From Macrostomum lignano (taxonomy: Eukaryota), in the NCBI GenBank assembly GCA_002269645.1, contig NIVC01001500.1, positions 62,001 through 126,000 on the forward strand: 64,000 bases of DNA, read 5' to 3'. The notes beneath the pieces were generated by a model. That model did not search any database. It saw only the letters and a list, made by a program, of their open reading frames with translations, and had not been told where the DNA came from. The translations under genes and the position numbers were made by a program. Shown here one piece after another: positions 12,244 through 41,101 of this stretch (position 1 is the first letter of the stretch; each line of letters starts with the position of its first letter).

Positions 12244-15200
12244 TCAAGAAAGGTCGCAACGATGCTTTTTCTTCCCAGTCTTTCTCTCCACCTGTTTGAT
12301 GGTCGGCTCAGCCGAAGCAGCAGAAGGGGAGCAGTCCACAGTAACAGGAGACCTGCTCTGACCAGCCAGTCTGTACTGACTCATAATTCGATCGATTGCA
12401 ACCGACTCAGACTCAAATTCAATAACATCAGTGGGTTGAATCCAGTTAGCATCGGGCTTGGACTGCTCAAGCATCCAGCGATATTTTCTAGCCTGCTCTA
12501 TGGAGGGCCGGTTGCCTGGCTGCTGGGACATGAGCTCGGCGATCAGTTCCCGGCACGGCTTGCTAACCCAATCTGGCAGGGTGTAGCTACCGGCTGCTAT
12601 GGCCTCGTAGATTTGCAGCACGCTGCGACCCGTGTACGGCACTTGGCCGCTGACCATGAAGTAGAGGCTGACGCCGCAGCAGTACATGTCCAGTTTGCGG
12701 CCGGAAAGCCGCCTGCAACCTGTGGCCACCTGGCGATGAGGGATGACGGATGGGCAGTCAGCTGAGCTGCTCAAGCGGTACACGCTTGTCGTGCGATTCA
12801 CAGCCATGAGGGCCAACCTCCAAAGCGCAGAGAGTGTACATGCCTAACGGTTAGACAGTCAGGGGCCGCTGTACATCCTGTGTGAGCGTGTGCATGAGTG
12901 CTGTGCCTGCGTACAGTATTGGCGCGCTTGTGTGTGCTCAGGAGTCAGTCCCGATGAAAACGGTTACCCAGGCCAAGAAGTGTTGGGCTGCGCCCTTCCA
13001 GTGCGTATGTACTCGTACTTGTGTATCAATTTTGCTTGCCATCCCGCCCCGTCCCCCGTCTCGCTCCCGGGCCAGAGTTTGTGAGAGGCGCAAGTCTCAA
13101 CCCTGGCCTAGCCCTTTGCACCCAGCCCCCGGCCCAACCTCTGTCCAATCTGGGTGCCGACCCTACCCCCTCCCTCGTTGCCCGCCTCACCCTGGGGCTG
13201 CTCGTATTGGCTGGCTGGTTGATAAGCCGGCTGGGCCCCAGGGTTTGGCTCGCCCTCTCCAGTCTGCCCCACTCCTTCCCCCTTTTTTGTGTATTATTTA
13301 AATGCTAGCCCTGAGCGGGCTGCGCTCCACGTTGGTGTCCGCTCGTTGTTCATCTGCACTTTGCTCGTTCGTCTGCATTCTGGTTGTTCGTTCGCTTAAC
13401 TGTTGTGATCGATTGCAATTTGTTCGATTAAACTGTCTGCTCTCGGCCAATAAATACTTCGTTAAATTCCAAGTATCTGACTGGAGAGGTGAGCTCGAGC
13501 TTTCGTTCTTCTGGGTTGCCGCGTGGGGCCGGGATCTGCAGGGACACCTGGGAACGGTGAACTCTCGCCGATCCCAGGGTGTTCGGTCAGGCGAACTCTC
13601 GCCGAACCGAGCGAGACAGGGTAGGAATAGCCGGGGTGAGGGCTGGGACCGGGGTGTCTCAGGCGGGGAGGGCCCGAACCTTGACCCGTCCAGCGGCCAT
13701 TAGGCCGAGACACAACAGAAGCGTCCCAGAGTCACTTGCGTCGCTGCAGATATGCTGTAGGTAACACAGGTAAAGTAGGAAAGCAGTGATTCCTAGATAA
13801 CTCTAAAGCAACAAGATGTCACGGTGCAAGTCACCAAAGAGTCGTCAAACAGTCGCCTAAGAGTCAATTTGAAGCGTTTTATTGTCCGCGACTTTAAAAC
13901 GACTCTGAGACGACGCAAGTGACTCTGGGGTCGTAGAGTCGTACCTGAGGCGTGCTGGGGTCGCTTTAGAGAGAGAGAGAGAGATAAGTGCTTTCGGCGC
14001 CTCAGCCATTGATCAGGCTCTTACGCCACTAGAGATATATAGATTCCAAGTTGGGAGTGTACTAATGTACACTAAGATCCTAATTAGAGCTAAGAGGACT
14101 GTACATCGAGCCGGGCAAGCGGCGCCAGTCAGGCCGAGAGCGGGCCCTACCCCCGACCCTCAGAGCGTACGCCTACCCCAAACCCAATTGGCTTATCTAA
14201 ACCTCCCCGGGGCTGGCAGGGGTTAAGTGAACCTCTGGGGCAGCCCGTGCCTTCTCCTGGGTTAGAAAATGCCAAAAAATGGTCCGAAGACCTCCCCACG
14301 GCCGTGGCCACCCGGAGGAGCCTCCCCACCTACCAGACCCCGGGTACTCATGCCAAGACAGTCTCTTATTTTTGAAGCGGCAGGAGGGCTAATCGCCGGG
14401 ACTATTTCACCCTTTGCTTCGCCAACCCGCCATTTCTATAGTGACCGTGCCAACGGTCTCGTCCTGCTCAGACTCAGTCCTGGTTCTGGCACACTCCAGC
14501 TTTAATAGGGTCGCTGGCTGTTCGCTCAGAGGGCACTCCGAGGGGGACCGTCAGAGCACCAACTGGAACAGGTATAGGCCTGCCTTCCTATACAGCTACC
14601 CACAGCCCTTCCTGATCCACTATTACCCTCCAACCCTACCCAGCCTACTAACTCATTACAAGCTTTCGGCCAGGCAGAGACAAGTTTCACAGGTTAGGCG
14701 CCTCTATGCGAGACAAAACCAGGGGTCGCTTAGAATCACAGAGCTGCGTCTAAAGCGCATCTGCGTCACTTAATGAATCAAAATCGCATTTTGCATTTGT
14801 AACAACTCTATATATTCAACTTGAGTTAGTAGTGCTGTGCTTACACAACGACTGTTGGACGACTTTTCGCAACTATTTTACGATTCTGCAACTCTCACGT
14901 GATGGGCCCGTGACTCAACAGTCGCTAGAGTCACTAGTGAGATGTTTGCAATAACTCTATAGCGATTCTGGTCACGATAACGTGTCCACAGCCTTCCTAC
15001 GAATCATTATTTTATAATAAATCACAGGTCAGGGTTCAGGTAATCACGGATGAGGATTAAGCCCTTTGGACTCGATAGAAATTTGGGATTTTAGGACTAC
15101 ACAAGTGCTAGTTGGCTGGCTACAAAGACTTTATTTTGATACCTCGGGCGGTTGAATAGCGGGCGTGGCCTGACTGCCAGTGATGACGTCATCATCGGCA

Positions 15201-15844
15201 GAATCGGCGGTCGGACCCAGCTCCGACAGCCATTCGCAGACGCCAAAATCGGTTATTTTAATTTCGTGTACTTCTGTCAGCAACAAATTGCCAGGCTTGA
15301 GGTCTTTGTGCACCAGGCGCATGGAGTGCAGGTACTCGACGCCATTTAGTAGTTGGGCAAAATAGCAGCGAGCCTGAGATTCTGGCAGGTGACGGCAGGT
15401 AGGCAACTCGCCGTCTGACGTGTCGCTAAATGATGCAGGATCCAGGCCTTTAGTCTGCAGGTCATGCAGACTGCAGACTGCCCACTCCATCACTAGGTAA
15501 CGCTTTGCACCATCATTAGAAAGAAAATCAGCGAAGAGTTTAGCGACATTTTTATGCTCCAATCGTTTCATTGCATTGGCCTCGCGATCGACATTTTCAA
15601 CTCCGCGCGGCAGTTTTTTTACTAATCTAAGAGTGATGATCTTCACAGCCAATCGGCGCTGGTCGTCAATGTCAACGCAGAGTTTGACTTTGCCATAGGA
15701 GCCTTCGCCTAGCAGGCCGCCAACTAAATAACGATTTAGCAGCAGTTTTGGCACTTTAGTGGCATAAACTATTGGTGGGGCATCCAGCTTGGTTATCAAA
15801 TCATTTAAATTGCATGAGAATGAATCATCAGCCATTGCTTCCAT
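12244..15844 (-). CDS. STK11: STK11/LKB1(PAR-4)-like serine/threonine kinase, 395 aa. Exons 15844-15143 and 12729-12244
   Basis: LLGEGSYGKVK, AVK, HKDLKPGNLLLT, DFG and QPPE are LKB1-type motifs. Donor GAG|gtatca at 15142 and acceptor cgccag|GTG at 12729 give QPPE-VATG...GRKLDMYCCGVSLY, which follows LKB1 QPPEIANG...GFKVDIWSAGVTLY. Divergent, so it may be a paralog. Confidence 0.85.
12790..12950 (+). mobile_element. Headless copy of the same SINE family
   Basis: GCCAACCTCCAAAGCGCAGAGAGTGTACATGCCTAACG...GGCCGCTGTACA..TGTGTGAG aligns to the reverse complement of 19800-19970. Confidence 0.7.
12981..13717 (+). mobile_element. Solo LTR, 737 bp, inside the STK11-like intron
   Basis: Termini TGTTG...CAACA; 4-bp TSD GAAG (12977-12980 and 13718-13721); TATA-like TATTTAAA at about 13295 and AATAAA at 13449-13454. 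Confidence 0.7.
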
Positions 15845-17764
15845 AGTGTGTAAATAATACTGACTTAGGAAAATATAGCTAGCTCATGCAGAAATGATAT
15901 TTGAATACTATTAAATAAAAGTACATATATGCCATTTAGAAGGTAGCTTATTAGATTAAATAATTAAATAAGAGATTTTATTATTATTGTTTTTCGTTTG
16001 TTTCTGTTTCTTACATTTTTGTTTCTTGAAATTATAGGATTAATACAAATTGAGGTTACTACAAATATCTGTTAGACTCTGGCTAGTACTCGTATATTGA
16101 GCATTGTGCAACAGCCATCCAAATCTACAATTGTACAAGTCAAAAGGTAACATTAATAGGATCTATTGCTAAAATGCCAAGTAGCAATTATATTAAAACC
16201 TGAATCCTTTTAAGTTGCTTGGGCTTAGTACCTATAAAAATGCAAACTTCTTAAGGCTTATAATATCACTATATATAGCAGCATATGATATTAAGAGCTA
16301 GATTCATGCAATGCTATATAAGACAGGAAGACACAAACAAAAATACAATTGTGTATATAAAGCAAATGCTACTTTTTAAACCACTTAAGTGCAATTAGCC
16401 CAAACAGACAAGGTAAAAAAATGACTAGTTAGGGGTCTATATACTCATAAATAGACCTAAGTGCAAGGGTATGAGCAAATGGTAAAGACAAGATTAGAAT
16501 AAGGCTTATGATAAACAAAAATGAAGACTAATAAACATACCATGATTGATAGGATAAAGTTTAAAAAATTATAAGCTATATCTCATTCATAATCATTTGA
16601 ACACTTATTGATAGTTGATAGTTCAAAGATATTTGAATAGGCCTACAAACTCTGTGAAAGTCAAATATACATAACAATTATAAACAAAAATGCAACTAGA
16701 AACTTAGTTTTAATTTTAGTCTAAGTCTTAATTTTTAAACATTTAAAATTTTTTATATATTGTAATAAAGTATAGGTTGAGCTTTTAACCAGACAAAATA
16801 TACTATATATAGCATTTGTTAGCTAAGTTTAATAGATAACTCAAAATAAAATCTTGTAATTATGGATGCAAAGCTAACATTTATTGATTTATCAATAATA
16901 GCACTATTGTTTCAATGTAATATTAATAACAGTTAAAATTCTTATAATATTTAATAATAGGATTAGCTAGACTAGCCTAGATATTTGATAGGTGTTCAAT
17001 AATAGTATTTGTGTGGATATGTCATATGTGTTTTTAGTGTAGTCTAGTTTTCTATCTATAGCTTGATAGCTAAATATAGTCATGGAAATTCAATGAAGAA
17101 GAAGAATGAATTATTCTTAAGCAAAGGATTTTTTAAGTTTTTTGTTTTCGTTGATTGTAGCAGTAAGCTTTGGAGAAACACGTACAACTTCAAACAAGAG
17201 CTTCAAAGAAGAGAGCTCGAACTAAATTGTGTCTAAGAAATTTGTGATTTTAATTTCTCGCCGCGTTTTTTCTCCACTGCGGCTCTTCACGACGTTTTTC
17301 GAGCTCAAACATCGATCGATCTTAGAAACAAAATAACTGCTATTCCATAGACCATAACGAGAAATCGGTAGGAACGGTAAAAGCATTGAATTGGCAGAGT
17401 CTGTCTAATCTGCAATTATTTCTTTTCAAAAAAAATTATTTTTTTATTATAGCTACGCAATATAATGACTTTAATTCACTAATTCAGCAAACTAGATGAA
17501 TACAGGATAATACTCGTATAAGATCTCATTTGATCGGTTTCAACCGAATCACTGTTCCGTGGTGTGTGCAGTTTTCACCGCTTGATTAGCGGTGAAGCTT
17601 GATTGTGTTTTTCAAGTGAAATGGCGATTGCAGCCACGACTGCCAGGCACTAAATGTGATATCGTTCAGTTCGATTTGAAAAATTGATTATATCAAGAGT
17701 AAGGCGCAAGAACTTCTGAAGTATTGAATGTATAGACCCTGTTGAGATTTTTTTAATAGAGTTT

Positions 17765-20086: not shown

Positions 20087-20919
20087 AGCGGTATGTGTGT
20101 TTGCTGATGTAACAAAAAATAAGTTGTCAAGTCAAAGTCTAGGTGCAAACCGTTTTCTGGTGGTGTTTACGCTCGCAAGGACGCAAACAACCTTATTATG
20201 GTTTCGACAGCTGACCATTTCATAAGCTTACAGTTTCACGAGCTCGAAAACTTCAAAAGACACGTCATTATTGTCAAAGTGTCTTAAGTTGTCAAAGCGC
20301 CGCTTTGAATTGTCAAAACACCCGTGTGCATGAGTGCGTGAATGCGTACGGCATTGGAGCGCTTGGGTCAGGAGTCAGAATTGCCTCAGCGCCGCATGGT
20401 GTCCACAGTTATTATTAAGATTGTTATTAAAACATAGATGAATTTCATGTACCTTTATACCTGGCTTCATTGTGGGTGTTCCTCCTGGGTCCACCCACCA
20501 TATCATCAACTAGTTGGTATGGAACTTACACGTACGTTCATTGTTCTCGTCATCAGTATAATACGTAATTGCACATCCGTAATGCTAACTAAGGTCATCC
20601 TCACCTGCACTTTTAAAGCTGTATTGCAATTAAGAGTCCTGCATTTCGTCAGAAGCCCCCTGCAGTTGCTGTCCTGGCTACGGTCTACAGAAGCATCAGT
20701 GCATTAAATTTCTACAAATATGCGCAGAGTTTAATTTCAACCCCGATTTTTGCTTGCAATTTTTGGCTTTGCTAAAAGCTTTTATTGAGAGTTTTGAACA
20801 AAACAATGGGCTGGTGAATTCTGCCTTTAAAACGTCGCAAATCATATTACAGACATTTAACCTCAAATCTTTCGGGACTAGACAAAACCATTATTTATAA
20901 TGTAATAATACAATATGTA

Positions 20920-21470
<551 letters not shown>

Positions 21471-22149
21471 GATAAAACAATGACATTGGTAGTCCTTGAG
21501 ACACGCTGATTGCACTCTTTGAACCAGAATTTCGCAGCATTTTTAGTGAATTGAATCAGTGCAGAACATTTGTAGGACTGCCGCTCGTACGTGAAATTCG
21601 CAGTGTAGCGCTTGAAAAAATTAAATCTACAAACCAATCTTGAACGGCAAAGAACGGCAAAGAATACCTTGGCTTGTCCCGCCGGTTTAAACAAAATGAA
21701 GAGCCAATCGCTGCGAGGCTTAATGAAGCTTCACGGATTAAGGTGTTTGCTAAATCATGCTTTTTTCGCGCCTGTCTCCACAACCCTTGAAAAAAGGCAT
21801 TTCCTAATTAGAACTGGCTGGGGAACGGTTGTTCCCACTGAATATCAGTACTGCGTTCCCTTTCCTCACTAATATTATCCCAGTATATGTTTAACAGTTG
21901 TAACCGCCTGGGGCAGCGCAGGCTGTAATGTTTATAGCTTGAGACGTACGCCGAAGTTGAGTTTGCTACCGATAAAACTGTTGAGCAGATAAGCTCGTGC
22001 AGGCATTTTTGTGGGATTTGTCATCGCTATTAGTGCAATTCAATTTGCGCATTGCTTGACATCCAATCATTTCTCTCTGCTTTGCTTGCATCCAGTCTTT
22101 GTAGCTGCGTGTCTCATTCACTTCGGTACCTGCTTCTCATTGGTGTCTT

Positions 22150-22445: not shown

Positions 22446-22682
22446 CAATCTTCACTCTCCTCTCTTTCTGTTTCAACTGTCCTCATGCATTCAGCTTCGC
22501 TCTGAAACACTTGCATTTGCGTACAGGTAAAATACTATAAGAACAAAACAGCTGATAAACCCATAAAGCACTGCTTGCCAACAGTTATTAATTCAAGTTT
22601 ATTCTACCATTTTTCAATAGCGGCACACAGACTCCTTTGATTTGCATAAGATTTTTCATGGTTTCGTCAACAAGAAACTTTT

Positions 22683-24761
22683 TCAGCCAATAAAACCTGG
22701 AGCGCTTCGTTCGAGCCGCCGTTGCTGCTCCCGCAGCAGGTATTGGATTGTGGCTTCGTCCATGGGGATGTACTCGCCGAATGTGGGAATTCCTGACAAC
22801 GAAGAGGACAATCGCTTCTTGTAGGTGGGCATCATTTTTAATTCTTCTACGTCATAGTTCCCGTTGTCAGGGTAAAAGACGTCAGAGTCGGTCTCCTGTT
22901 GACGAACTGAAAAGGCCTCGGTTGTCGGCAGTTGAAGGCAGTGAAGTGTCGCGACGACCAGCAGCAGTGCTGCGGCGAATGGCGCTGCCGGGGGGTTGTA
23001 AACATAGATAGGAGCATTGGCTATTTTGACCAATTAATTATTAATTAATTAAAGATACGGGGATGAGGAGTAAGGTGAATGTGAAGTGGGGGTGGCCGCG
23101 GAGAGAGGTGGCTGCAGAGTGGGGTTAGCCGCGGAGTGGAGTGGCTGCGGAGTGAGGTGGCTGCGGAGTGAGGTGGCTGCGGAGTGGAGTGGCTGCGGAG
23201 CGGGGCTGCGGGTGGCTGCAGAGTGGTGGGGTTGGCCGCGGAGCGGGGTGGCTGCGGAGTGGGGTGGCTGCGGAGCGGGGCTGCGGGTGGCTGCGGAGTG
23301 AGGTGGCCGCGGAGCGGGGTGGCTGCGGAGTGAGGTGGCTGCGGAGTGAGGTGGTCGTGGAGTGGGGCCGGCCGCGAAGCGGGGTGGCTGCGGAGAAAAT
23401 TGGGTGATGGAGCGCGAACGATTGAAACTAAGGTATATTTGAGCTCTACTGGTAGATTGAGAGAATTAATTATTGATGATCCTTGATATGGATAAAAAAG
23501 TGGATTCTGGCTGGCTCACTTCTTTTACTCTCAGGCTTACTAGTAGACAATTCTCTAGTTACGCTCTAGAGCTTTGAAATATTTTGCCTGAATTTATCAC
23601 CTAGCAAAGCAATCAGTCAAGCTGGCGCTTGCTCTACCAGCGTATTTGTCATTAACCTCGCTCACGATCGCTCAGAATGCAATCAAGCAAAAAAATGTAG
23701 TATGAAGGGAATTGAAAAAATATATATTAATTACTATATTTGTAATACGAGCTGCAAGGTAAAAATTTGTATTCACACAGAATTTTAAAATAGATCTTAA
23801 TGTTAAGCCAGAAAGGCGCTCAGTGAGAGGCCAGAGAGGCACTCAGTGAGATGCCATAGAGACACTCAGTGAGAGGCCAGAGAGGCACTCAGTGAGAGGC
23901 CAGAGAGGCACTCAATGTGAGGCCAGAGAGGCACTCAGTGAGAGGCCATAGAGGCACTCAGTGAGAGGCCATAGAGACACTCAGTGAGAGGCCATAGAGG
24001 CACTCAGTGAGAGGCCATAGAGGCACTCAGTGAGAGGCCAGAGAGGCACTCAGTGAGAGGCCATAGAGGCACTCAGTGAGAGGCCATACGCTCGTAGAGG
24101 CACTCAGTGAGAGGCCATAGAGACACTCAGTGAGATGCCATAGAGGCACTCAGTGAGATGCCATAGAGGCACTCAGTGAGAGGCCATAGAGGCACTCAGT
24201 GAGAGGCCATAGAGACACTCAGTGAGAGGCCATAGAGGCAACTCAGCGAGAGAGTAAAACTATTGCCCTCAATTGACCCCGGTGCTGAAATACAGCCTCA
24301 TCAATGTCAACGCCAATCACATTAACAATTTCGTAGAGACGGCGGGCAAGTCAACATCAGTTTAGACGAATTGGTTCTGGCAATTGATGCGGTGACTCTT
24401 CAGGGAGCCTGGGGGGGGGGGAGGGCAGCCGTCAGCGCGGTCAGCTGCCCACGCACAGAAATTCAGCAAATTTGGTCACACAGGGCTTGTTGCCTTTTCA
24501 ACGATAAGAGAAGTGTCTATTTCTGCTGAATTAAATAAATACTGATTAACTGACTGAAGTCTATTCTCATCTGATAGATGCAATATACGCTCTTATGCTA
24601 CTTTCTTGATGAGGAAACCTCAGTGGAGAAGAAAAACATGATTGAGATTAGCGGTGGATTAGAAAAGATTATAGAAGAATAAGGAAATTGAAAAAAAGTT
24701 AAAAAATATAACGCTTTGACAAGGAAAGCAGGAGGGGTTCACAAATCCCAGACAGATTGAC

Positions 24762-24806
<45 letters not shown>

Positions 24807-24977
24807 TACAGACATCCACTAAGACAGACAGACAGACAGACAGACATACACTAAGACATACAGACAGACAGACAGACAGACATACACTAAGACAGACAGA
24901 CAGACAGACATACACTAAGACAGACAGACAGACAGACAGACATACACTAAGACAGACAGACAGACAGACATACACTA

Positions 24978-25022
<45 letters not shown>

Positions 25023-25136
25023 CACAGACAGACACACAGACAGACAGACAGACAAACAGACACTAAGACAGACACTAAGACAGACTGACAGACACGGACT
25101 GAACTCACCGCACGATTGCCGTAACCCAAATCTCAT
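22683..25136 (-). CDS. Putative neuropeptide prohormone, 109 aa. Exons 25136-25109 and 22984-22683
   Basis: The ORF-track start is TTG. ATG exon [10 protein letters not shown]|gtgagt (donor 25108) joins ggcag|CG (22984) in phase, giving [33 protein letters not shown] (signal-peptide-like), an acidic spacer, KKR, then 41 aa plus terminal Gly and stop (amidation signal). Confidence 0.75.
23085..23395. repeat. G-rich minisatellite (GGGGTGGCTGCGGAGT)
   Basis: Tandem degenerate copies in the prohormone intron. Confidence 0.9.
23815..24245. repeat. About 22-bp minisatellite (GAGGCACTCAGTGAGAGGCCATA)
   Basis: Tandem array. Confidence 0.93.
24760..25095. repeat. (GACA)n with CACTAA interruptions
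   Basis: Abuts the prohormone exon 1 donor. Confidence 0.93.
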
Positions 25137-25255
25137 TGGCAAGCAGCAGAGTTATTAATTTCAACGGTTCTGCAGTTTGTGAGGCCACCTTTATTAGCCA
25201 ATCGCTCCCAATTTCTGCAAGCAAAGCAGACGCTGCTGCAGGCGGCCAATGCTGC

Positions 25256-25323
25256 TTATATAAAGTACAATCATTATTCAGCAAATTTTTTGGTCCGCAG
25301 CCAATGGCGGTTCGATAGCCAAT
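25256..25323 (-). promoter_or_regulatory. Candidate TATA box and CCAAT boxes of the prohormone gene
   Basis: TATATAA on the minus strand at 25262-25256, about 120 nt upstream of ATG 25136; CCAAT motifs at 25301 and 25319. Confidence 0.5.
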
Positions 25324-25634: not shown

Positions 25635-26509
25635 AAAGCAACAACAACAACAACAGCAAAAATCCCAGTGACAAAACAACAACAACAACAGGAACAATCC
25701 CAGTGACAACACAACAACAACAACAGGAAAAATCCCAGTGACAAAACAACAACAACAACAGGAACAATCCCAGTGACAAAACAGCAACAACAACAGGAAC
25801 AATCCCAGTGACAAAACAACAACAACAACAGGAACAATCCCAGTGACAAAACAACAACAACAACAGGAACAATCCCAGTGACAAAACAGCAACAACAACA
25901 GGAACAATCCCAGTGACAAAACAGCAACAACAACAGGAACAATCCCAGTGACAAAACAACAACAACAACAGGAACAATCCCAGTGACAAAACAGCAACAA
26001 CAACAGGAACAATCCCAGTGACAAAACAACAACAACAACAGGAACAATCCCAGTGACAAAACAACAACAACAACAGGAACAATCCCAGTGACAAAACAGC
26101 AACAACAACAGGAACAATCCCAGTGACAAAACAACAACAACAACAGGAACAATCCCAGTGACAAAACAACAACAACAACAGGAACAATCCCAGTGACAAA
26201 ACAGCAACAACAACAGGAACAATCCCAGTGACAAAACAGCAACAACAACAGGAACAATCCCAGTGACAAAACAACAACAACAACAGGAACAATCCCAGTG
26301 ACAAAACAGCAACAACAACAGGAACAATCCCAGTGACAAAACAACAACAACAACAGGAACAATCCCAGTGACAAAACAGCAACAACAACAGGAACAATCC
26401 CAGTGACAAAACAGCAACAACAACAGGAACAATCCCAATGACAAAACAACGACAACAACAACAACAACAGCAACAATCCCAATGACAAAACAATAACAAC
26501 AGCAACAGC

Positions 26510-27893: not shown

Positions 27894-28450
27894 TCCGGGC
27901 AGCCGCCGCCGAGGCCGGCATTGCGTGAGCCCGCGAGTGCTCCGTCATCGCCTGGACGGACGGCTCCGCTGAGGAGGGTACCAGCAACGGGGCGGCGCCG
28001 CCGTCATCGAGTTCAGGGACGGTCGCCCCGCGGTCACCGTCCGCGCCGCGGCCGGTGCTCTGTGCAGCAGCTTCCAGGCCGAACTTGTCACGATCCAGAC
28101 CGCCCTGTCCTACTGCCTCCGTGAGGGCCCGGCCCTGCCCCGCAGCATGGCGGTTCTCACTGACAGCCTCAGCGCTCTGACCGCCCTGGAGCAGGGGCCC
28201 GCCCGCCAGTCTACCGCTACCGGTGCGACCTGCTGGCAGCTCATCGCCGGCTCCTCCGGCCGCACTGATTTTCTTTTCTGCTGGGTCCCCGGGCACGCCG
28301 GCATCGATGGCAACACCGCCGCGGGCCTTGCGGCCGCCGAAGCCGCCACTCTCGCGCAAGCGCACAACAGCAACAATCCTATCGTGCACGTGCCTATCAG
28401 CATTAGCTCGGCCCGCGCCGCCATCCGCCGCGATCGCCGCGTCCTCGACG
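27894..28450 (+). mobile_element. I-group LINE RNase H fragment C, decayed
   Basis: WTDGSAEEG / GGAA..AAGALCSSFQAEL..TDSLSAL..WVPGHAGIDGN; TGA at about 27927 and a frameshift at about 27990; the last catalytic Asp is replaced by Gly. Confidence 0.85.
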
Positions 28451-28459
28451 CCCGCATTC

Positions 28460-31400
28460 TCGGCCCACAACGAAATGCACGCGGACGGAAAGAAGGACCT
28501 GCCAATAACAAGGGCCTCAAGGTCCTGCAATGGAATGCGGACGGCATCCGAAACAAAATGGGAGAACTGGAGGAGCTGGTCCAACGCCTCAAAGTTGATG
28601 TTGTCATGATCCAAGAATCTAAGCTTGACCCCGTCTCCCGCACGCCAAAGATCCCCGGCTTTACCACCGTGAGAAAAGACCGACGAACGCTACGTTCCAG
28701 CGAGATGTACAAGGGAGGAGGCCTCCTCACGTTCATCCGCCAAGAAACCCCCTTCCGGCGGCTCAAAGGCTGGAGTGGGGGCACGGTGAAAGGCTGCCGC
28801 ATCGTGATCAACCTTAGCGCCAAACAGCGTCTCGTGCTCACTAACATCTACCGGCCGCCCATCAGGCGCAGTGCTGGCGCCGACTGCCGGGAGCACCCGG
28901 ACATCGATCTCTGGCTGAAGCCGCACCAGTGCGAGATTATTGCTGGCGACTTTAATATCCATCACACGACCTGGGGTAGTCTGCCTGGCCAGGGGCCGAG
29001 GGCGCCGAACAAGCCAAAGCCCTGCTGGAGTGGTGTGACAGTAATGGGTATTGTGTCCTCAACTCGGGCTCCCTCAACCTGTCTCGATCGCCGCGACGGT
29101 GGAGAGAGTGCCCCCGACATCAGCCTCGCTAGCGCTTGGCCTCGACGACCTCTGCTCGTGGAGGCCCTTGACGAACTGGGCTCTGCCCACAAACCCATTC
29201 TCATCACTGTGGATGGCGACCGCGCTAGCACCGACCAGAAGATTTGTCTCGCCTGGGCCTGGCAGAAAGCTGACTGGAACAGCTACCAGGCCCAGCTCGA
29301 AGACGATAGCAATGAGCTCAACAACGGCACTGTCAAGCAGCAAATCCAACGCCTCTGCTTTCGTATGAGTAAGGCGGCCAAAGCTTGCATTCCCATGAAG
29401 CGCGTCTCCTCCAAAAACAAGCCCTACTGGGATTCGGAGCTCTCTAGTCTTCGGGACGAAAGAAACAGACTCAGATCCCGTGGCGGTGACCCGGACGAGT
29501 GGAAGCGCAAGAATGCCGAGCTCAACAGGGCCTGCGCGGAGAAAAAAGCCGCCTTCTGGCAGGAATTTGTGCAGGACCTGTCTAGTTCCTCTGACATCAA
29601 AAAAATGTGGCGTACCATTAAAACCCTAAGTGCTGGAGAGCAACCGACCGCGAAGAACGAAATCCTAGTGGCGGACGGAAAGGAGTGCAGCTCGGATCGC
29701 GACAAAGCAAATGCTTTTGGCCGACACTACGCCAAGATCAGCACCCTCAAGCATGACGCCGCTGACCGCGCCTTCAAAGTTAGCACTGCGAAGCCTTTGA
29801 ATAAGTATCCCACGGGGACCTCCGAGTACGATTGCGCCCTCACCATGGAAGAACTCAAACGAGTCATCTCACACCCCGACGTCACCAAAAAAGCCGGCCC
29901 CGACGGCATCGAAGCGGCTTTCTTCAGACACCTGCCGGACTCGTGGCTCACGGCCTGGCTCACGGTCTTTAATCGGTGCTGGTCCCTAGGGCACTGCCCG
30001 GGAGTCTGGAAGAAGGCGGTTATCGTCCCACTTTTGAAAGAGGGCAAAGACCCAGCCAACTGCAGCAGCTTCCGGCCTGTTAGTCTCACTTCCATCTGTG
30101 TTAAAATCATGGAGCGCATTGTGATGGACCGGCTCATGCACTGGATCGAACTCAACAACACGCTGCAACCGTGGCAAGCTGGTTTTCAGAGAGGGCGTAG
30201 CTGCGAAGAACAAGTGGCGCGTCTGGTCCAGGAAATCCAAGACCACTGGGAACAACGCCCGCCTCGCAAACGATCGCTGTCACCCTTGACTGCTCCCGCG
30301 CCTTCGACCGGGTCTGGCGTACCCGCCTCCTTGCCCGTCTCATGGATGAGGGAGTCCCGGGTCGCATGGTGCACTGGTTTGCCAGCTTCCTGGAGGGGCG
30401 CCAGATTGCCGTCCGCGTGGGCGATACGATTGGCAAATGGAGGCCGCTTAAGGAGGGGGTGCCGCAGGGGGCAGTGTGCTCGCCGGTGCTCTTCCTCCTG
30501 TACATCAATGACTGGGCGGACTCCCTGGTCCCAGATGTCAACTACGCCGGCTTTGCTGACGACCTGGGCGTCTGGGCCTCGGGCAACAACATCCAGCAGA
30601 TTGCGGAGCGCCTTCAACTGGCCATCGATCGCATCGACGCCTGGGCCACAGATCTCCGTATCGATCTCAATCCCCTCAAAACTGAATGCTGGATCTTCTC
30701 GAGAGACCGCAGGGACCGCGACCGTACCCTCAACCTGTGCATCCGAGGCCAGCAACTCCCAACCAGGCAGGAGCTGCTCTACCTGGGTGCCTGGATCGAC
30801 AGCGGCCTGCTCTTCAAGCGGCAGTCCGACGAAGTTGCCGCCAAACTGCGCCGTCGTTGTGCTGTCCTGCGTGCACTGTCGCATCGCGAATGGGGGTGGG
30901 ACCGCGCCACGCTTAGGACGGTGTATAAAGCCGTGGTGGAGTCTGTGGTTTGGCATGCGGCTGTAGCCTGGATGCCCTGGCTCTCCCAGACTCGCCTCAA
31001 TGACCTGGACAGAGCCCAAAAAGTGGCTCTGAGACTTGTCTCTGGTCTACCAAGCTCGACTCCTAGCGTGGCCATCTACCGTGAGGCCGATTGTGTGCCC
31101 ATCAGCCTGGAGGCCAAACGACGAGCGCTGGTCGCCGTCGAAAAGGCGCTCCGGCGGTCCGAGGCGGACCCCTGGAGGTCCAGGTGTGAACTCAGGACCC
31201 CCACCCGGCTCAAAGCCAACCGTGGCCTCCGCGAACAAGCTCACTCAGTGCTCAACGAGATCCTCCCACACAGCCGTCTCCCGGAAGCCTGGGTCAGAGC
31301 CCCGCCGTGGGACACGCTCAGCGGCTCGGACCGGCTGAGGCTCTATCCGTAACTGGTGAGACCGCTCCGTAAATCCGACAGTCAGATCACCCGCGATCCG

Positions 31401-32506
31401 ATCATCGCCGACACCTTCCGAGAACGCCTGCCCAGTACCTGCTACTTCACGGACGGCTCCGCTTCGGGTGGCACCGCCAACGGCGGCGCCGCCTGGATCC
31501 TGTTTGACCAGGGGCCTTTTCATATTACCAATTCCAGAACCAAAATCGGTTCGGAATTCCAAGAAAAACAGCAGTATAACTATTTAACTCTGTTAATATT
31601 TGACTGCCTTAACAACCTAACTTAGCACAATTTTTCACTTTCTTCTTGGCGATTGTCATTCAATAATAAAAACGTTATAGCACGTATCTCCCTCTAGTTA
31701 TGGAGACAAAAAGTTATACTTCACAAATTGGTTCTGGTTCTGGAACCAGAACAAGCAATATGAAAAGGCCCCAGGAGACGGGCACGATCATCCAGGGCGG
31801 CTACTCTGCAGCGGGCAGATGGTGCAGCTCCTTCGAAACCGAGCTCCGCGCGCTCCGAGATGCCGTCGTGGATGTCATCCAGCAGGACGTTGACACCGCC
31901 GCCCTCCTCACCGATAGCCAGGCGGCCGTCAGAGCTCTGATAGCCGACCGGCCCACCACTAACGCGCTACTCGAAGACCTGAAGGCCCTTCTTCGGCAAG
32001 CAGCTGGCCGTTGCGTTCTCACGATCCAGTGGATTCCCGGCCATGCTGGCGTGGCTGGTAACGAGTTCGTCGATCGCGAGGCCAAAGCCGCAGCTCTTCT
32101 GGATCAAGCCCAAGTGGCCATCTCGCTCGAAGCAGCCAAGCGGTTTATCTACCGCCGTCTCGAGTACCTTCCGGACCTGACCGGCCATCTGAAGGAGACT
32201 TACCAAGGACGCATCACGCACCATAACGGCAGCCGGCGTGAGCAAGTCCTCGTTGCGCAGATGAGAGCTGGACACTGCCCCTCCTCGGCCTATTACGCTA
32301 AGCGCATCGGCAAAGCTCAGCTGGCCGAGTGCAGGCTTTGCGGGCTCGAGGTAGACCAATTCCACCTGGTCCACTGCCCTGCGATCGATGTCGCCCGAAG
32401 ACAGAACAACATTTGCGATCTGAAAGACCTAGCCGATGGGAACCTGGTGGCGCGGCTCCTGGAGTGGATCGAATGGACCCCGCTCTAGGCGGCTGCACTC
32501 CGCACT
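28460..32506 (+). mobile_element. Near full-length Ingi-like (I group) non-LTR retrotransposon D: APE endonuclease, RT, RNase H, C-terminal Cys/His motif; disrupted
   Basis: EN: VLQWNADG, IQESKL, GGGL, GDFNIHH, PDISLA, SAHKPI. RT: GPDGI, FRPVSLTS, QAGF, GVPQGAVCSP, FADD, YLG. RNH: FTDGS, TEL, TDSQ, WIPGHAGVAGNEFVD. Also QMRAGHC and CRLC..H..C. Frameshift at about 30268, TAA at 31350, MITE insertion 31512-31771; 3' end in (CAA)n. Confidence 0.92.
31512..31771. mobile_element. PIF/Harbinger-type MITE, 260 bp
   Basis: Perfect 15-bp TIRs GGGCCTTTTCATATT (31512-31526) and AATATGAAAAGGCCC (31757-31771); CAG duplicated on both sides. Removal restores the LINE frame (WILFDQ-ETGTIIQ). Confidence 0.85.

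Positions 32507-36667: not shown

Positions 36668-41101
<4,434 letters not shown>

What the first reader, a model, noticed from the sequence alone, without database searches (positions are those of the whole stretch)
22683..25136. Unannotated neuropeptide precursor predicting a 41-residue amidated peptide
Seen: a 28-nt ATG exon 2.1 kb upstream completes a signal peptide. After KKR comes [42 protein letters not shown]-stop (22811-22686). Established: terminal Gly is the amide donor; CRF/DH44/egg-laying-hormone peptides are about 36-46 aa, amidated, often begin with an LS/IS motif, and CRF contains LLRE and ends Ile-amide. Inference: a possible flatworm CRF/DH44/ELH-like hormone. Alternatively, cleavage at RR yields [14 protein letters not shown]. 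Family assignment is by eye only.
Basis: partly seen in the sequence, partly recalled or inferred. Interest (0 to 1): 0.75.

Follow-up and report, generated by a model that had tools for sequence, protein, structure and literature searches.

The report
Orphan flatworm amidated-peptide precursor gene
This is a real, transcript-backed two-exon gene of the flatworm Macrostomum lignano, already in GenBank as a "hypothetical protein", that looks like a typical small flatworm neuropeptide precursor ending in ...APGFI-amide, but no test supports calling it a CRF/DH44/egg-laying-hormone relative.

Summary
The sequence observation holds at the stated coordinates. Exon 1 is 25136-25109 (28 nt, ATG, GTGAGT donor), the intron is 2124 nt, and exon 2 is 22984-22683. 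The 109-aa product has a signal-peptide-like N-terminus, an acidic spacer, KKR, a 41-residue peptide, Gly and stop.

"Unannotated" applies only to function. The window is Macrostomum lignano contig NIVC01001500.1, and the spliced product is identical to GenBank PAA67216.1 (Mlig010686.g1, "hypothetical protein"). That annotation was built from RNA-seq transcripts. Two paralogous loci share the same junction. The coding sequence is 99.4% identical between paralogs, against about 84% for intron and 3' flank.

The CRF/DH44/ELH assignment failed each sequence or structure test:
- No Pfam CRF or ELH hit at E<=10.
- 1.4 bits against my own family profile.
- No CRF or urocortin hit in PDB.
- Pro/Gly at six positions, with a predicted helix only at peptide residues 19-36.

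No homologue was found among 1.8 billion representative proteins.

The architecture matches generic flatworm neuropeptide precursors, 12 of 29 of which end in Gly-stop in a cestode set. Internal RR and RLER sites could release [14 protein letters not shown] or SAPGFIamide, which fit the P-x-F-[V/I]-amide motif.

Verdict: a plausible lineage-restricted prohormone whose mature product is undetermined. Interest is modest.

The parts
25255..25262 (-). TATA box (TATATAAG), 32 nt upstream of the inferred transcript 5' end
   Evidence: Read directly from the sequence. The partial gene model of paralog g3 starts at the base equivalent to window 25230.
25137..25230 (-). Inferred 5' UTR (94 nt). It has no upstream ATG, and the start context is GCCAATG.
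   Evidence: The 5' end is inferred from the g3 model. It is 97.9% identical to paralog g2.
25109..25136 (-). Coding exon 1 (28 nt): MRFGLRQSC plus the first base of the Ala10 codon. This is the n-region of the signal peptide.
   Evidence: It is identical in all three paralogs and is part of the annotated CDS of PAA67216.1.
22985..25108 (-). Intron (2124 nt, GTGAGT...CAG), largely made of three tandem-repeat arrays: 24749-25094 (CAGA-type), 23807-24252 (23-mer) and 23089-23395 (GC-rich 16-mer).
   Evidence: The donor is GTGAGT in g1 and g2 and GTAAGT in g3, and the acceptor is conserved.
22914..22984 (-). Start of exon 2: the rest of the signal peptide ([24 protein letters not shown]). Candidate signal-peptidase sites lie after C25 or A33.
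   Evidence: Rule-based analysis. AlphaFold2 predicts a helix at residues 10-26. SignalP was not available.
22821..22913 (-). Acidic spacer, F34-Y64 (31 aa, 7 acidic and 2 basic residues).
   Evidence: Predicted as coil with low pLDDT.
22812..22820 (-). KKR tribasic prohormone-convertase site.
   Evidence: Read from the sequence and conserved in the three paralogs.
22689..22811 (-). The 41-residue C-terminal peptide [41 protein letters not shown]. The predicted helix covers only peptide residues 19-36.
   Evidence: There is one substitution in paralog g2 (L72F, peptide position 5).
22707..22721 (-). Internal basic sites: RR (22716-22721) and the overlapping R-L-E-R site (22707-22718). Cleavage would release LERSAPGFI-Gly or SAPGFI-Gly.
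   Evidence: Whether either site is used is not known.
22686..22706 (-). SAPGFI plus Gly, the amide donor immediately before the stop. This is the P-x-F-I-amide type C-terminus.
   Evidence: Gly-stop endings occur in 12 of 29 cestode neuropeptide precursors. In Schmidtea NPP-22, mass spectrometry detected AKYFRLa, and that precursor ends in AKYFRLG-stop.
22683..22685 (-). Stop codon TGA.
22598..22603 (-). AATAAA polyadenylation signal, 80 nt after the stop.
   Evidence: Its use is inferred, not shown.

Best explanation
The locus is Mlig010686.g1, one of three near-identical copies of a small gene in Macrostomum lignano. It has its own TATA promoter, two coding exons and a short 3' UTR.

It encodes a 109-aa secretory pre-prohormone of the kind catalogued in flatworms as 'npp' or 'spp' genes. 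The parts, in order, are a signal peptide, an acidic spacer, a KKR convertase site, and a C-terminal peptide whose final Gly (directly before the stop) would be converted to an Ile-amide.

Inferred mechanism:
1. Co-translational entry into the ER.
2. Cleavage by a PC2-type convertase after KKR, and probably also after RR and/or RLER.
3. Trimming of the basic residues by a carboxypeptidase.
4. Amidation of the C-terminus.
5. Release of ...APGFIamide, as the 41-mer, as [14 protein letters not shown] or as SAPGFIamide, acting on an unknown receptor.

Shown: the gene structure, its transcript-derived annotation, conservation of the paralogs, and the motifs. Inferred: secretion, processing, amidation, expression in neurons or endocrine cells, and bioactivity.

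The gene has no detectable homologue outside M. lignano and should be treated as a lineage-restricted orphan prohormone, not as a member of the CRF/DH44/ELH family.
For: - Identity and annotation: the spliced product is 100% identical to PAA67216.1. The window equals NIVC01001500.1 and the CDS span is the same.
- Transcript basis: the Mlig_3_7 GenBank annotation comes from StringTie/TACO transcripts built from RNA-seq plus TransDecoder ORFs (PMC5730564).
- Constraint: between g1 and g2 the CDS is 328/330 identical. Upstream is 96.8%, the 3' end of the intron 84%, the 3' UTR 84% and downstream 83%. The junction is the same in all three copies.
- Gene-like signals: a TATA box 32 nt before the model's 5' end, no upstream ATG, and an AATAAA 80 nt after the stop.
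- Signal-peptide features and an acidic spacer.
- Architecture matches real flatworm precursors. Twenty-nine Taenia crassiceps NPPs are 71-146 aa; 12 end in Gly-stop and 5 more in Gly plus basic residues.
- In Schmidtea NPP-22, a Gly-stop precursor, mass spectrometry detected the amidated peptide.
- M. lignano has a nervous-system-expressed PC2 homologue that is essential for development (PMC4490696).
Against: - There is no direct evidence of expression site, secretion, processing or amidation.
- No orthologue was found, so conservation of KKR and the terminal Gly across species could not be tested.
- Both g1/g2 coding differences are non-synonymous and none is synonymous. The exon conservation could therefore reflect gene conversion or nucleotide-level constraint rather than selection on the protein.
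- Both the KKR and RR sites are followed by Leu, which is reported (from memory) to be a less favoured P1' residue in some taxa.
- The gene ID was not found in the supplementary tables of three M. lignano expression papers, so no tissue information was obtained.
Confidence: 0.6

Rival explanations
1. One reading: the 41-residue amidated peptide is left uncut at RR and is a divergent flatworm orthologue of CRF/DH44/egg-laying hormone, acting on a class B (secretin-type) GPCR.
For: - The length (41 aa), the C-terminal Ile-amide, an N-terminal L-S/S-L-S motif and an 'LLRE' tetrapeptide resemble family members (sequence).
- Internal dibasic pairs stay uncut in several family members (from memory).
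- DH44/ELH similarity is known to be confined to short stretches and hard to detect by BLAST (PMC3890597).
Against: - No Pfam CRF or ELH hit at E<=10.
- 1.4 bits against a profile of 14 family peptides, and only 8 residues aligned.
- phmmer against PDB finds no CRF, urocortin or sauvagine chain.
- Six Pro/Gly residues, including A-P-G just before the C-terminus. The predicted helix covers only residues 19-36.
- The family's conserved C-terminal block is absent.
- A survey of nine lophotrochozoan phyla that included Platyhelminthes reported the ELH/DH44 motif only in annelids, nemerteans, molluscs and arthropods (PMC6425005).
Confidence: 0.05
2. The bioactive product is the short C-terminal peptide (SAPGFIamide or [14 protein letters not shown]), and it is a single-copy flatworm representative of the spiralian P-x-F-[V/I]-amide family (Mytilus inhibitory peptide, F[V/L/I]amide). 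This is a sub-case of the best explanation that adds a family claim.
For: - The C-terminus S-A-P-G-F-I-Gly fits P-x-F-[V/I]-amide.
- RR and R-x-x-R sites lie just upstream of it.
- The family is documented in molluscs, annelids and others (PMC6188537).
- FLamide, FVamide and FIamide endings are described as ubiquitous in lophotrochozoans (PMC8557429).
Against: - Known family precursors carry many copies. This gene encodes one copy.
- The match is four residues long and was noticed after the fact.
- The same source warns that convergence of such short motifs is likely, and the family's receptor is unknown.
Confidence: 0.15
3. It is a small secreted protein, or an unprocessed orphan protein, that is not a signalling peptide (for example a gland or body-fluid protein). 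On this view KKR, RR and the terminal Gly are coincidental.
For: - No homologue, no domain and no expression data.
- M. lignano has many fast-evolving lineage-specific secreted proteins (PMC7336406, title and abstract).
- Both paralog differences are non-synonymous.
Against: The combination of a signal peptide, an acidic spacer, a tribasic site, a Gly-stop ending and a length of about 100 aa is exactly the flatworm NPP architecture. It is unlikely to arise together by chance.
Confidence: 0.2
4. The ORF is a chance TransDecoder call in a non-coding or spurious transcript, and no protein is made.
For: The ORF is short and has no homologues. Exon 1 contributes only 9 codons.
Against: - Exon 2 is 99.3% identical between g1 and g2, while the flanking intron and 3' UTR are about 84%.
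- The ATG is the first in the inferred transcript and has a good context.
- The frame is open through both exons in g1 and g2.
- The domain logic is coherent.
Confidence: 0.05

Closest known systems
Flatworm neuropeptide precursor (npp/spp) genes as a class (McVeigh 2009; Collins 2010, PMC2953531; Koziol 2016, as used in PMC11196405)
   Same: A 70-150 aa pre-prohormone with a signal peptide, an acidic spacer, a KR/KKR site and an amidated peptide at the extreme C-terminus that often ends in Gly-stop.
   Different: No sequence similarity to any of 29 cestode NPPs (best phmmer score 5.9 bits). No shared 3-4-mer motifs with the Schmidtea and Schistosoma prohormones in the Collins supplements. The segment after KKR is unusually long (41 aa) for anything outside the NPF family.
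Flatworm npp-2 (RGFIamide in Taenia, RGLIamide in Schmidtea)
   Same: The C-terminus ...GFI-Gly-stop gives a GFIamide ending, as in Taenia crassiceps Npp2.
   Different: npp-2 has 2-6 tandem KRRG[FL]IG copies and a Cys-rich spacer. This gene has one copy, no Arg before the Gly, and no Cys after the signal peptide.
Spiralian PxFVamide / Mytilus inhibitory peptide / F[V/L/I]amide peptides
   Same: The P-x-F-[V/I]-amide C-terminus is preceded by small residues (S-A-P-G-F-I-NH2), if RR or RLER is cleaved.
   Different: Those are multi-copy precursors of 5-7-residue peptides. Here there is a single copy behind a 30-aa N-terminal extension. The link is motif-level only, and convergence is likely.
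CRF / urocortin / DH44 / egg-laying hormone family (Pfam PF00473, PF02323)
   Same: A predicted amidated peptide of 41 aa ending in Ile-amide, an N-terminal S-L-S motif, an LLRE tetrapeptide, and a central amphipathic helix.
   Different: No profile match. Helix-breaking Pro/Gly residues lie in the N-terminal third and next to the C-terminus. The conserved C-terminal block is missing. An RR/RxxR site lies within the peptide.
Flatworm NPF/NPY family
   Same: A peptide of about 40 aa, amidated, at the very C-terminus of the precursor and ending in Gly-stop. It has N-terminal prolines followed by a Tyr-containing helix (compare Taenia crassiceps NPF).
   Different: There is no R-x-R-F/Y-amide ending. 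The hallmark intron inside the Arg codon before the last residue (PMC2953531) is absent, because exon 2 is continuous from residue 10 to the stop.

Membership tests
CRF/DH44/ELH | Significant match to family sequence profiles (Pfam CRF PF00473, ELH PF02323, or a profile of mature peptides) | tested here: not met
   hmmscan against Pfam at E<=10 gave no CRF or ELH hit. My own HMM of 14 peptides scored 1.4 bits, and 3% of shuffles scored at least as high. phmmer against PDB at E<=10 gave no CRF-family chain.
CRF/DH44/ELH | Mature peptide of about 36-46 aa with an amidated C-terminus | tested here: inconclusive
   The sequence predicts 41 aa plus a Gly donor only if the internal RR and RLER sites are not cleaved. 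No peptidomic data are available.
CRF/DH44/ELH | Largely continuous amphipathic helix running to the amidated C-terminus, with Pro/Gly confined to the N-terminal end | tested here: not met
   Pro/Gly lie at peptide positions 7, 9, 12, 16, 38 and 39, against at most position 10 in CRF and DH44. AlphaFold2 predicts a helix only at precursor residues 86-103, which are peptide residues 19-36 (single sequence, moderate confidence).
CRF/DH44/ELH | Cognate secretin-type (class B1) CRHR/DH44R receptor present and activated | not testable with these tools
   No M. lignano proteome search or receptor assay was available.
PxFVamide / Mytilus inhibitory peptide | C-terminal P-x-F-[V/I]-amide | tested here: met
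   The sequence ends A-P-G-F-I-Gly-stop. The motif definition comes from PMC6188537 and PMC8557429. Amidation itself is inferred.
PxFVamide / Mytilus inhibitory peptide | Multi-copy precursor of short peptides flanked by basic sites | tested here: not met
   There is a single copy in the precursor, and no further copies in the window or the paralog loci.
Flatworm npp-2 (RG[FL]Iamide) | Tandem KRRG[FL]IG repeats and a Cys-rich spacer | tested here: not met
   Compared with Taenia crassiceps Npp2 and Smed-npp-2, the candidate has one GFIG, no preceding Arg, and no Cys after residue 25.
NPY/NPF | C-terminal R-x-R-[FY]-amide, and an intron within the Arg codon preceding the last residue | tested here: not met
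   The peptide ends in APGFI. Exon 2 is uninterrupted from residue 10 to the stop. The hallmark is described in PMC2953531.
Generic flatworm neuropeptide precursor (npp/spp) architecture | A 70-150 aa precursor with an N-terminal signal peptide, an acidic spacer, a di- or tribasic site, and a C-terminal peptide ending in Gly-stop or Gly plus basic residues | tested here: met
   for the candidate. for the reference sets (12 of 29 end in Gly-stop and 5 of 29 in Gly plus basic residues). The signal peptide was judged by rules only, not by SignalP.
Generic flatworm neuropeptide precursor (npp/spp) architecture | Expression in neurons or secretory cells, and PC2-dependent processed peptides detectable by mass spectrometry | not testable with these tools
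   No expression or peptidomic data could be reached. The gene ID is absent from the supplements searched.

The most novel reading that the evidence does not exclude
The gene is the first recognised platyhelminth member of an ancient bilaterian peptide family, diverged beyond the reach of profile searches. It could be a truncated CRF/DH44/ELH-type hormone used as the intact 41-mer. Somewhat more plausibly, it could be a single-copy flatworm orthologue of the spiralian PxF[V/I]amide (Mytilus inhibitory peptide) system, whose receptor is still unknown.
Probability: 0.15. Interest if true: 0.55.

Novelty: new member of a known kind. Interest (0 to 1): 0.3.

Why it matters
If the prediction holds, M. 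lignano gains one more candidate peptide hormone. M. lignano is a transgenic, regeneration-competent model flatworm and an early-branching platyhelminth. The candidate has a clear, testable product (...APGFIamide) and a compact promoter (TATA plus less than 1 kb of unique sequence) that could drive reporters in the producing cells.

It would also illustrate how lineage-restricted flatworm neuropeptide genes sit in public annotations as 'hypothetical proteins'.

It does not at present bear on the evolution of the CRF/DH44/ELH system, because that link failed each sequence and structure test available here.

Tried and rejected
1. Word-indexed homology search of the full precursor against 5.8 billion proteins at E<=10. 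It found only the three M. lignano copies.

2. Exhaustive phmmer of residues 34-109 against 1.84 billion representatives. The five non-self hits are a bacterial repeat lipoprotein, a PG-rich repeat protein, an LVIVD/FG-GAP repeat protein and two very long proteins whose sequences I did not fetch. They match through 2-10 weak repeated stretches that inflate the E-value. I judged them spurious on inspecting the first three.

3. Pfam scan of the precursor and of the 42-mer. No CRF or ELH hit, only a sub-threshold CSPP1_C hit.

4. phmmer of the 42-mer against PDB. Only Lon protease at E=0.2.

5. My own CRF/UCN/DH/ELH profile. It scored 1.4 bits.

6. phmmer and blastp against 29 Taenia crassiceps NPP precursors. 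Nothing significant.

7. Search with Taenia crassiceps Npp2 to collect the npp-2 family. Only Taenia hits came back, so no profile could be built.

8. Motif look-ups in the Collins 2010 supplements (Schmidtea and Schistosoma prohormones). No shared motifs.

9. Full-text searches for Mlig010686, PGFIamide, APGFIG and GFIamide found no paper. A search for RGFIamide and variants returned only false matches.

10. The gene ID was not found in the supplements of PMC5816591, PMC7336406 or PMC12896417. Some of those files may have been truncated when stored.

11. McVeigh 2009 and Koziol 2016, the main flatworm NPP catalogues, are not held. I cannot exclude that this precursor is already listed there.

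12. The NPF reading was rejected for lack of the RxRF ending and of the hallmark intron.

13. The frameshift in copy g3 was considered as evidence of pseudogenisation. It was rejected as probably an assembly indel, because g1 and g3 differ almost only by gap columns.
Full report
**What is there**

On the minus strand of the window, an ATG at 25136 opens a 28-nt exon (ATGAGATTTGGGTTACGGCAATCGTGCG). It is followed by the consensus donor GTGAGT.

After a 2124-nt intron, a pyrimidine-rich acceptor (...TTTACAACCCCCCGGCAG) precedes exon 2 (22984-22683). The intron is largely made of three tandem-repeat arrays.

Splicing gives a 330-nt ORF encoding 109 aa: [109 protein letters not shown]-stop.

The frame of exon 2 stays open upstream of the acceptor but has no ATG before the hydrophobic stretch. 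An upstream start exon is therefore required.

**Where it comes from, and whether it is annotated**

The spliced protein is 100% identical to GenBank PAA67216.1, "hypothetical protein BOX15_Mlig010686g1" of Macrostomum lignano.

The window matches contig NIVC01001500.1 of assembly GCA_002269645.1. The annotated gene spans exactly the same 2454 nt.

The GenBank annotation of this assembly was derived from genome-guided RNA-seq transcript assemblies (STAR, StringTie, TACO, TBONE), with ORFs called by TransDecoder (PMC5730564). The 25109/22984 junction therefore rests on transcript evidence, although I could not inspect the reads myself.

"Unannotated" is thus true only of function.

**Paralogs**

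Two further loci exist, and both have the same exon structure and junction.
- g2 (PAA92792.1, contig NIVC01000040.1) has an intact 109-aa ORF with two substitutions, S43A and L72F.
- g3 (PAA48113.1, partial, contig NIVC01004233.1) has a GTAAGT donor and a 1-nt deletion in exon 2.
- g1 and g3 differ almost only by gap columns over about 1.9 kb. The g3 deletion is therefore most likely a long-read assembly indel, or else g3 is a very recent or allelic copy.

Identity between g1 and g2, by segment:

| Segment | Identity |
|---|---|
| CDS | 328/330 |
| Upstream 500 nt | 96.8% |
| 5' UTR | 97.9% |
| Last 330 nt of the intron | 84% |
| 3' UTR | 84% |
| Downstream | 83% |

Exon 2 is thus an island of conservation between diverged non-coding sequence. 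Both differences are non-synonymous and none is synonymous. The data therefore show constraint (or gene conversion) on the exon, but do not by themselves prove selection on the protein.

**Gene signals**

- A TATATAAG box lies at 25262-25255, 32 nt upstream of the position where the g3 transcript-derived model begins (25230).
- The inferred 94-nt 5' UTR has no upstream ATG.
- The start context is GCCAATG.
- An AATAAA lies 80 nt after the stop.
- tblastn finds only this one copy in the window.

**Protein anatomy**

- The N-terminus has two Arg followed by a 19-residue uncharged run (maximum Kyte-Doolittle value 3.1). Candidate cleavage sites compatible with the (-3,-1) rule lie after C25 and A33. 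AlphaFold2 predicts a helix at residues 10-26.
- A 31-residue spacer follows, with a net charge of -5.
- KKR comes next, then the 41-residue segment and Gly-stop.
- Within the 41-mer, Pro/Gly sit at positions 7, 9, 12, 16, 38 and 39.
- Only peptide residues 19-36 ([18 protein letters not shown]) are predicted helical, with pLDDT about 80-87 in an otherwise low-confidence single-sequence model.
- Two further potential convertase sites overlap at the end of that helix: RR|L and R-L-E-R|S.

Three end products are therefore possible: the 41-mer amide, [14 protein letters not shown] and SAPGFIamide. The sequence alone cannot choose among them.

**Comparison with real flatworm precursors**

A published set of 29 Taenia crassiceps NPP precursors (PMC11196405 supplement) is 71-146 aa long. 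Twelve end in Gly-stop and five more in Gly plus basic residues, typically after an acidic spacer and a KR site.

In Schmidtea, NPP-22 ends in AKYFRLG-stop, and the amidated peptide was detected by mass spectrometry.

M. lignano has a PC2 homologue that is expressed in the nervous system and is essential for development (PMC4490696).

The candidate therefore fits the generic flatworm prohormone architecture well. It shows no significant sequence similarity to any of the 29 cestode precursors. It shares no short motifs with the Schmidtea or Schistosoma prohormones in the Collins supplements.

**Test of the CRF/DH44/ELH idea**

- Pfam, which holds curated CRF and ELH models, gives no hit at E<=10 for the precursor or for the 42-mer.
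- A profile I built from 14 CRF, urocortin, sauvagine, urotensin-I, insect DH and molluscan ELH/CDCH peptides scores the 41-mer at 1.4 bits. The alignment covers 8 residues, and about 3% of shuffled versions score as high.
- phmmer against all PDB chains, which include CRF-family ligands, returns only a Lon protease at E=0.2.
- The helix-breaking residues and the A-P-G-F-I ending are unlike the family's helical, conserved C-terminal block.

They are the length, the Ile-amide ending, the L-S/S-L-S motif and LLRE. They do not rise above chance in any test I could run.

**Other families considered**

- **Flatworm npp-2.** It yields RGFIamide in Taenia and RGLIamide in Schmidtea, from tandem KRRG[FL]IG repeats behind a Cys-rich spacer. 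The candidate shares only the GFIamide ending.
- **NPF/NPY.** These peptides are also about 40 aa and sit at the precursor's C-terminus. They end in RxRF/Y-amide and carry a hallmark intron in the Arg codon. Neither feature is present here.
- **Spiralian PxFVamide / Mytilus inhibitory peptide / F[V/L/I]amide group**. S-A-P-G-F-I-amide fits this motif. However, those precursors are multi-copy, the match is four residues long and was noticed after the fact, and the literature itself warns of convergence.

**Homology at large**

The word-indexed search found only the M. lignano cluster. The exhaustive search returned five additional hits, all in long proteins matched through several weak stretches. 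The three I inspected are unrelated repeat proteins, and I judge all five spurious.

Short, fast-evolving peptide precursors are expected to escape such searches, and the libraries hold few flatworm transcriptomes. Absence of hits therefore says little beyond "orphan at this sensitivity".

**Verdict**

The best-supported interpretation is a lineage-restricted secretory prohormone that produces one or more ...APGFIamide peptides (confidence about 0.6). Whether the 41-mer or a short C-terminal peptide is the product remains open.

The CRF/DH44/ELH assignment is not supported (about 0.05). The main rival is an ordinary small secreted protein whose processing motifs are coincidental (about 0.2).

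The finding is a new member of a known kind and of modest interest. The main flatworm NPP catalogues (McVeigh 2009; Koziol 2016) could not be read, so prior description cannot be excluded.

Noticed in passing
L003:3001-5968 (contig NIVC01004233.1, paralog g3); equivalent to window about 22958: Paralog g3 has a 1-nt deletion in exon 2 (CTGCTGCT-GTC). This made the annotators emit a 140-aa 'partial' protein that reads the 5' UTR in another frame. g1 and g3 otherwise differ almost only by gap columns, so the deletion looks like a long-read assembly indel rather than a pseudogene.
   Followed up: partly
window 22985-25108 (intron), 20918-21474, 25640-26467: The intron is largely made of three tandem arrays: a CAGA-type array at 24749-25094, a 23-mer array at 23807-24252 and a GC-rich 16-mer array at 23089-23395. 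A perfect (TAGA)x139 array lies downstream of the gene, and a 35-mer x24 array lies upstream. The array lengths differ between paralogs (intron 2124 nt in g1, 2669 nt in g2).
   Followed up: partly
window 28147-32488 (+): A non-LTR retrotransposon sits about 3 kb upstream of the gene. Its long ORFs carry endonuclease/exonuclease/phosphatase, reverse transcriptase and RNase H domains.
   Followed up: partly
window 12683-15874 (-), ORF 15131-15844: A protein kinase gene (Pkinase domain, E=6e-33) lies downstream on the same strand. It is annotated in GenBank as a 405-aa product that runs beyond the locus I fetched.
   Followed up: no
window 36668-41101 (-): Large exons encode several C2 domains plus a PRT_C-type C-terminal region. 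This looks like a multiple-C2-and-transmembrane (MCTP-like) gene.
   Followed up: no
g1 against g2 coding sequence (window 22856 and 22767 equivalents): The only two coding differences between the paralogs are both non-synonymous (S43A, L72F). There are no synonymous changes, even though the adjacent intron and 3' UTR show about 10% mismatches. This could be gene conversion limited to the exon, or constraint at the nucleotide level. It is unexplained.
   Followed up: partly
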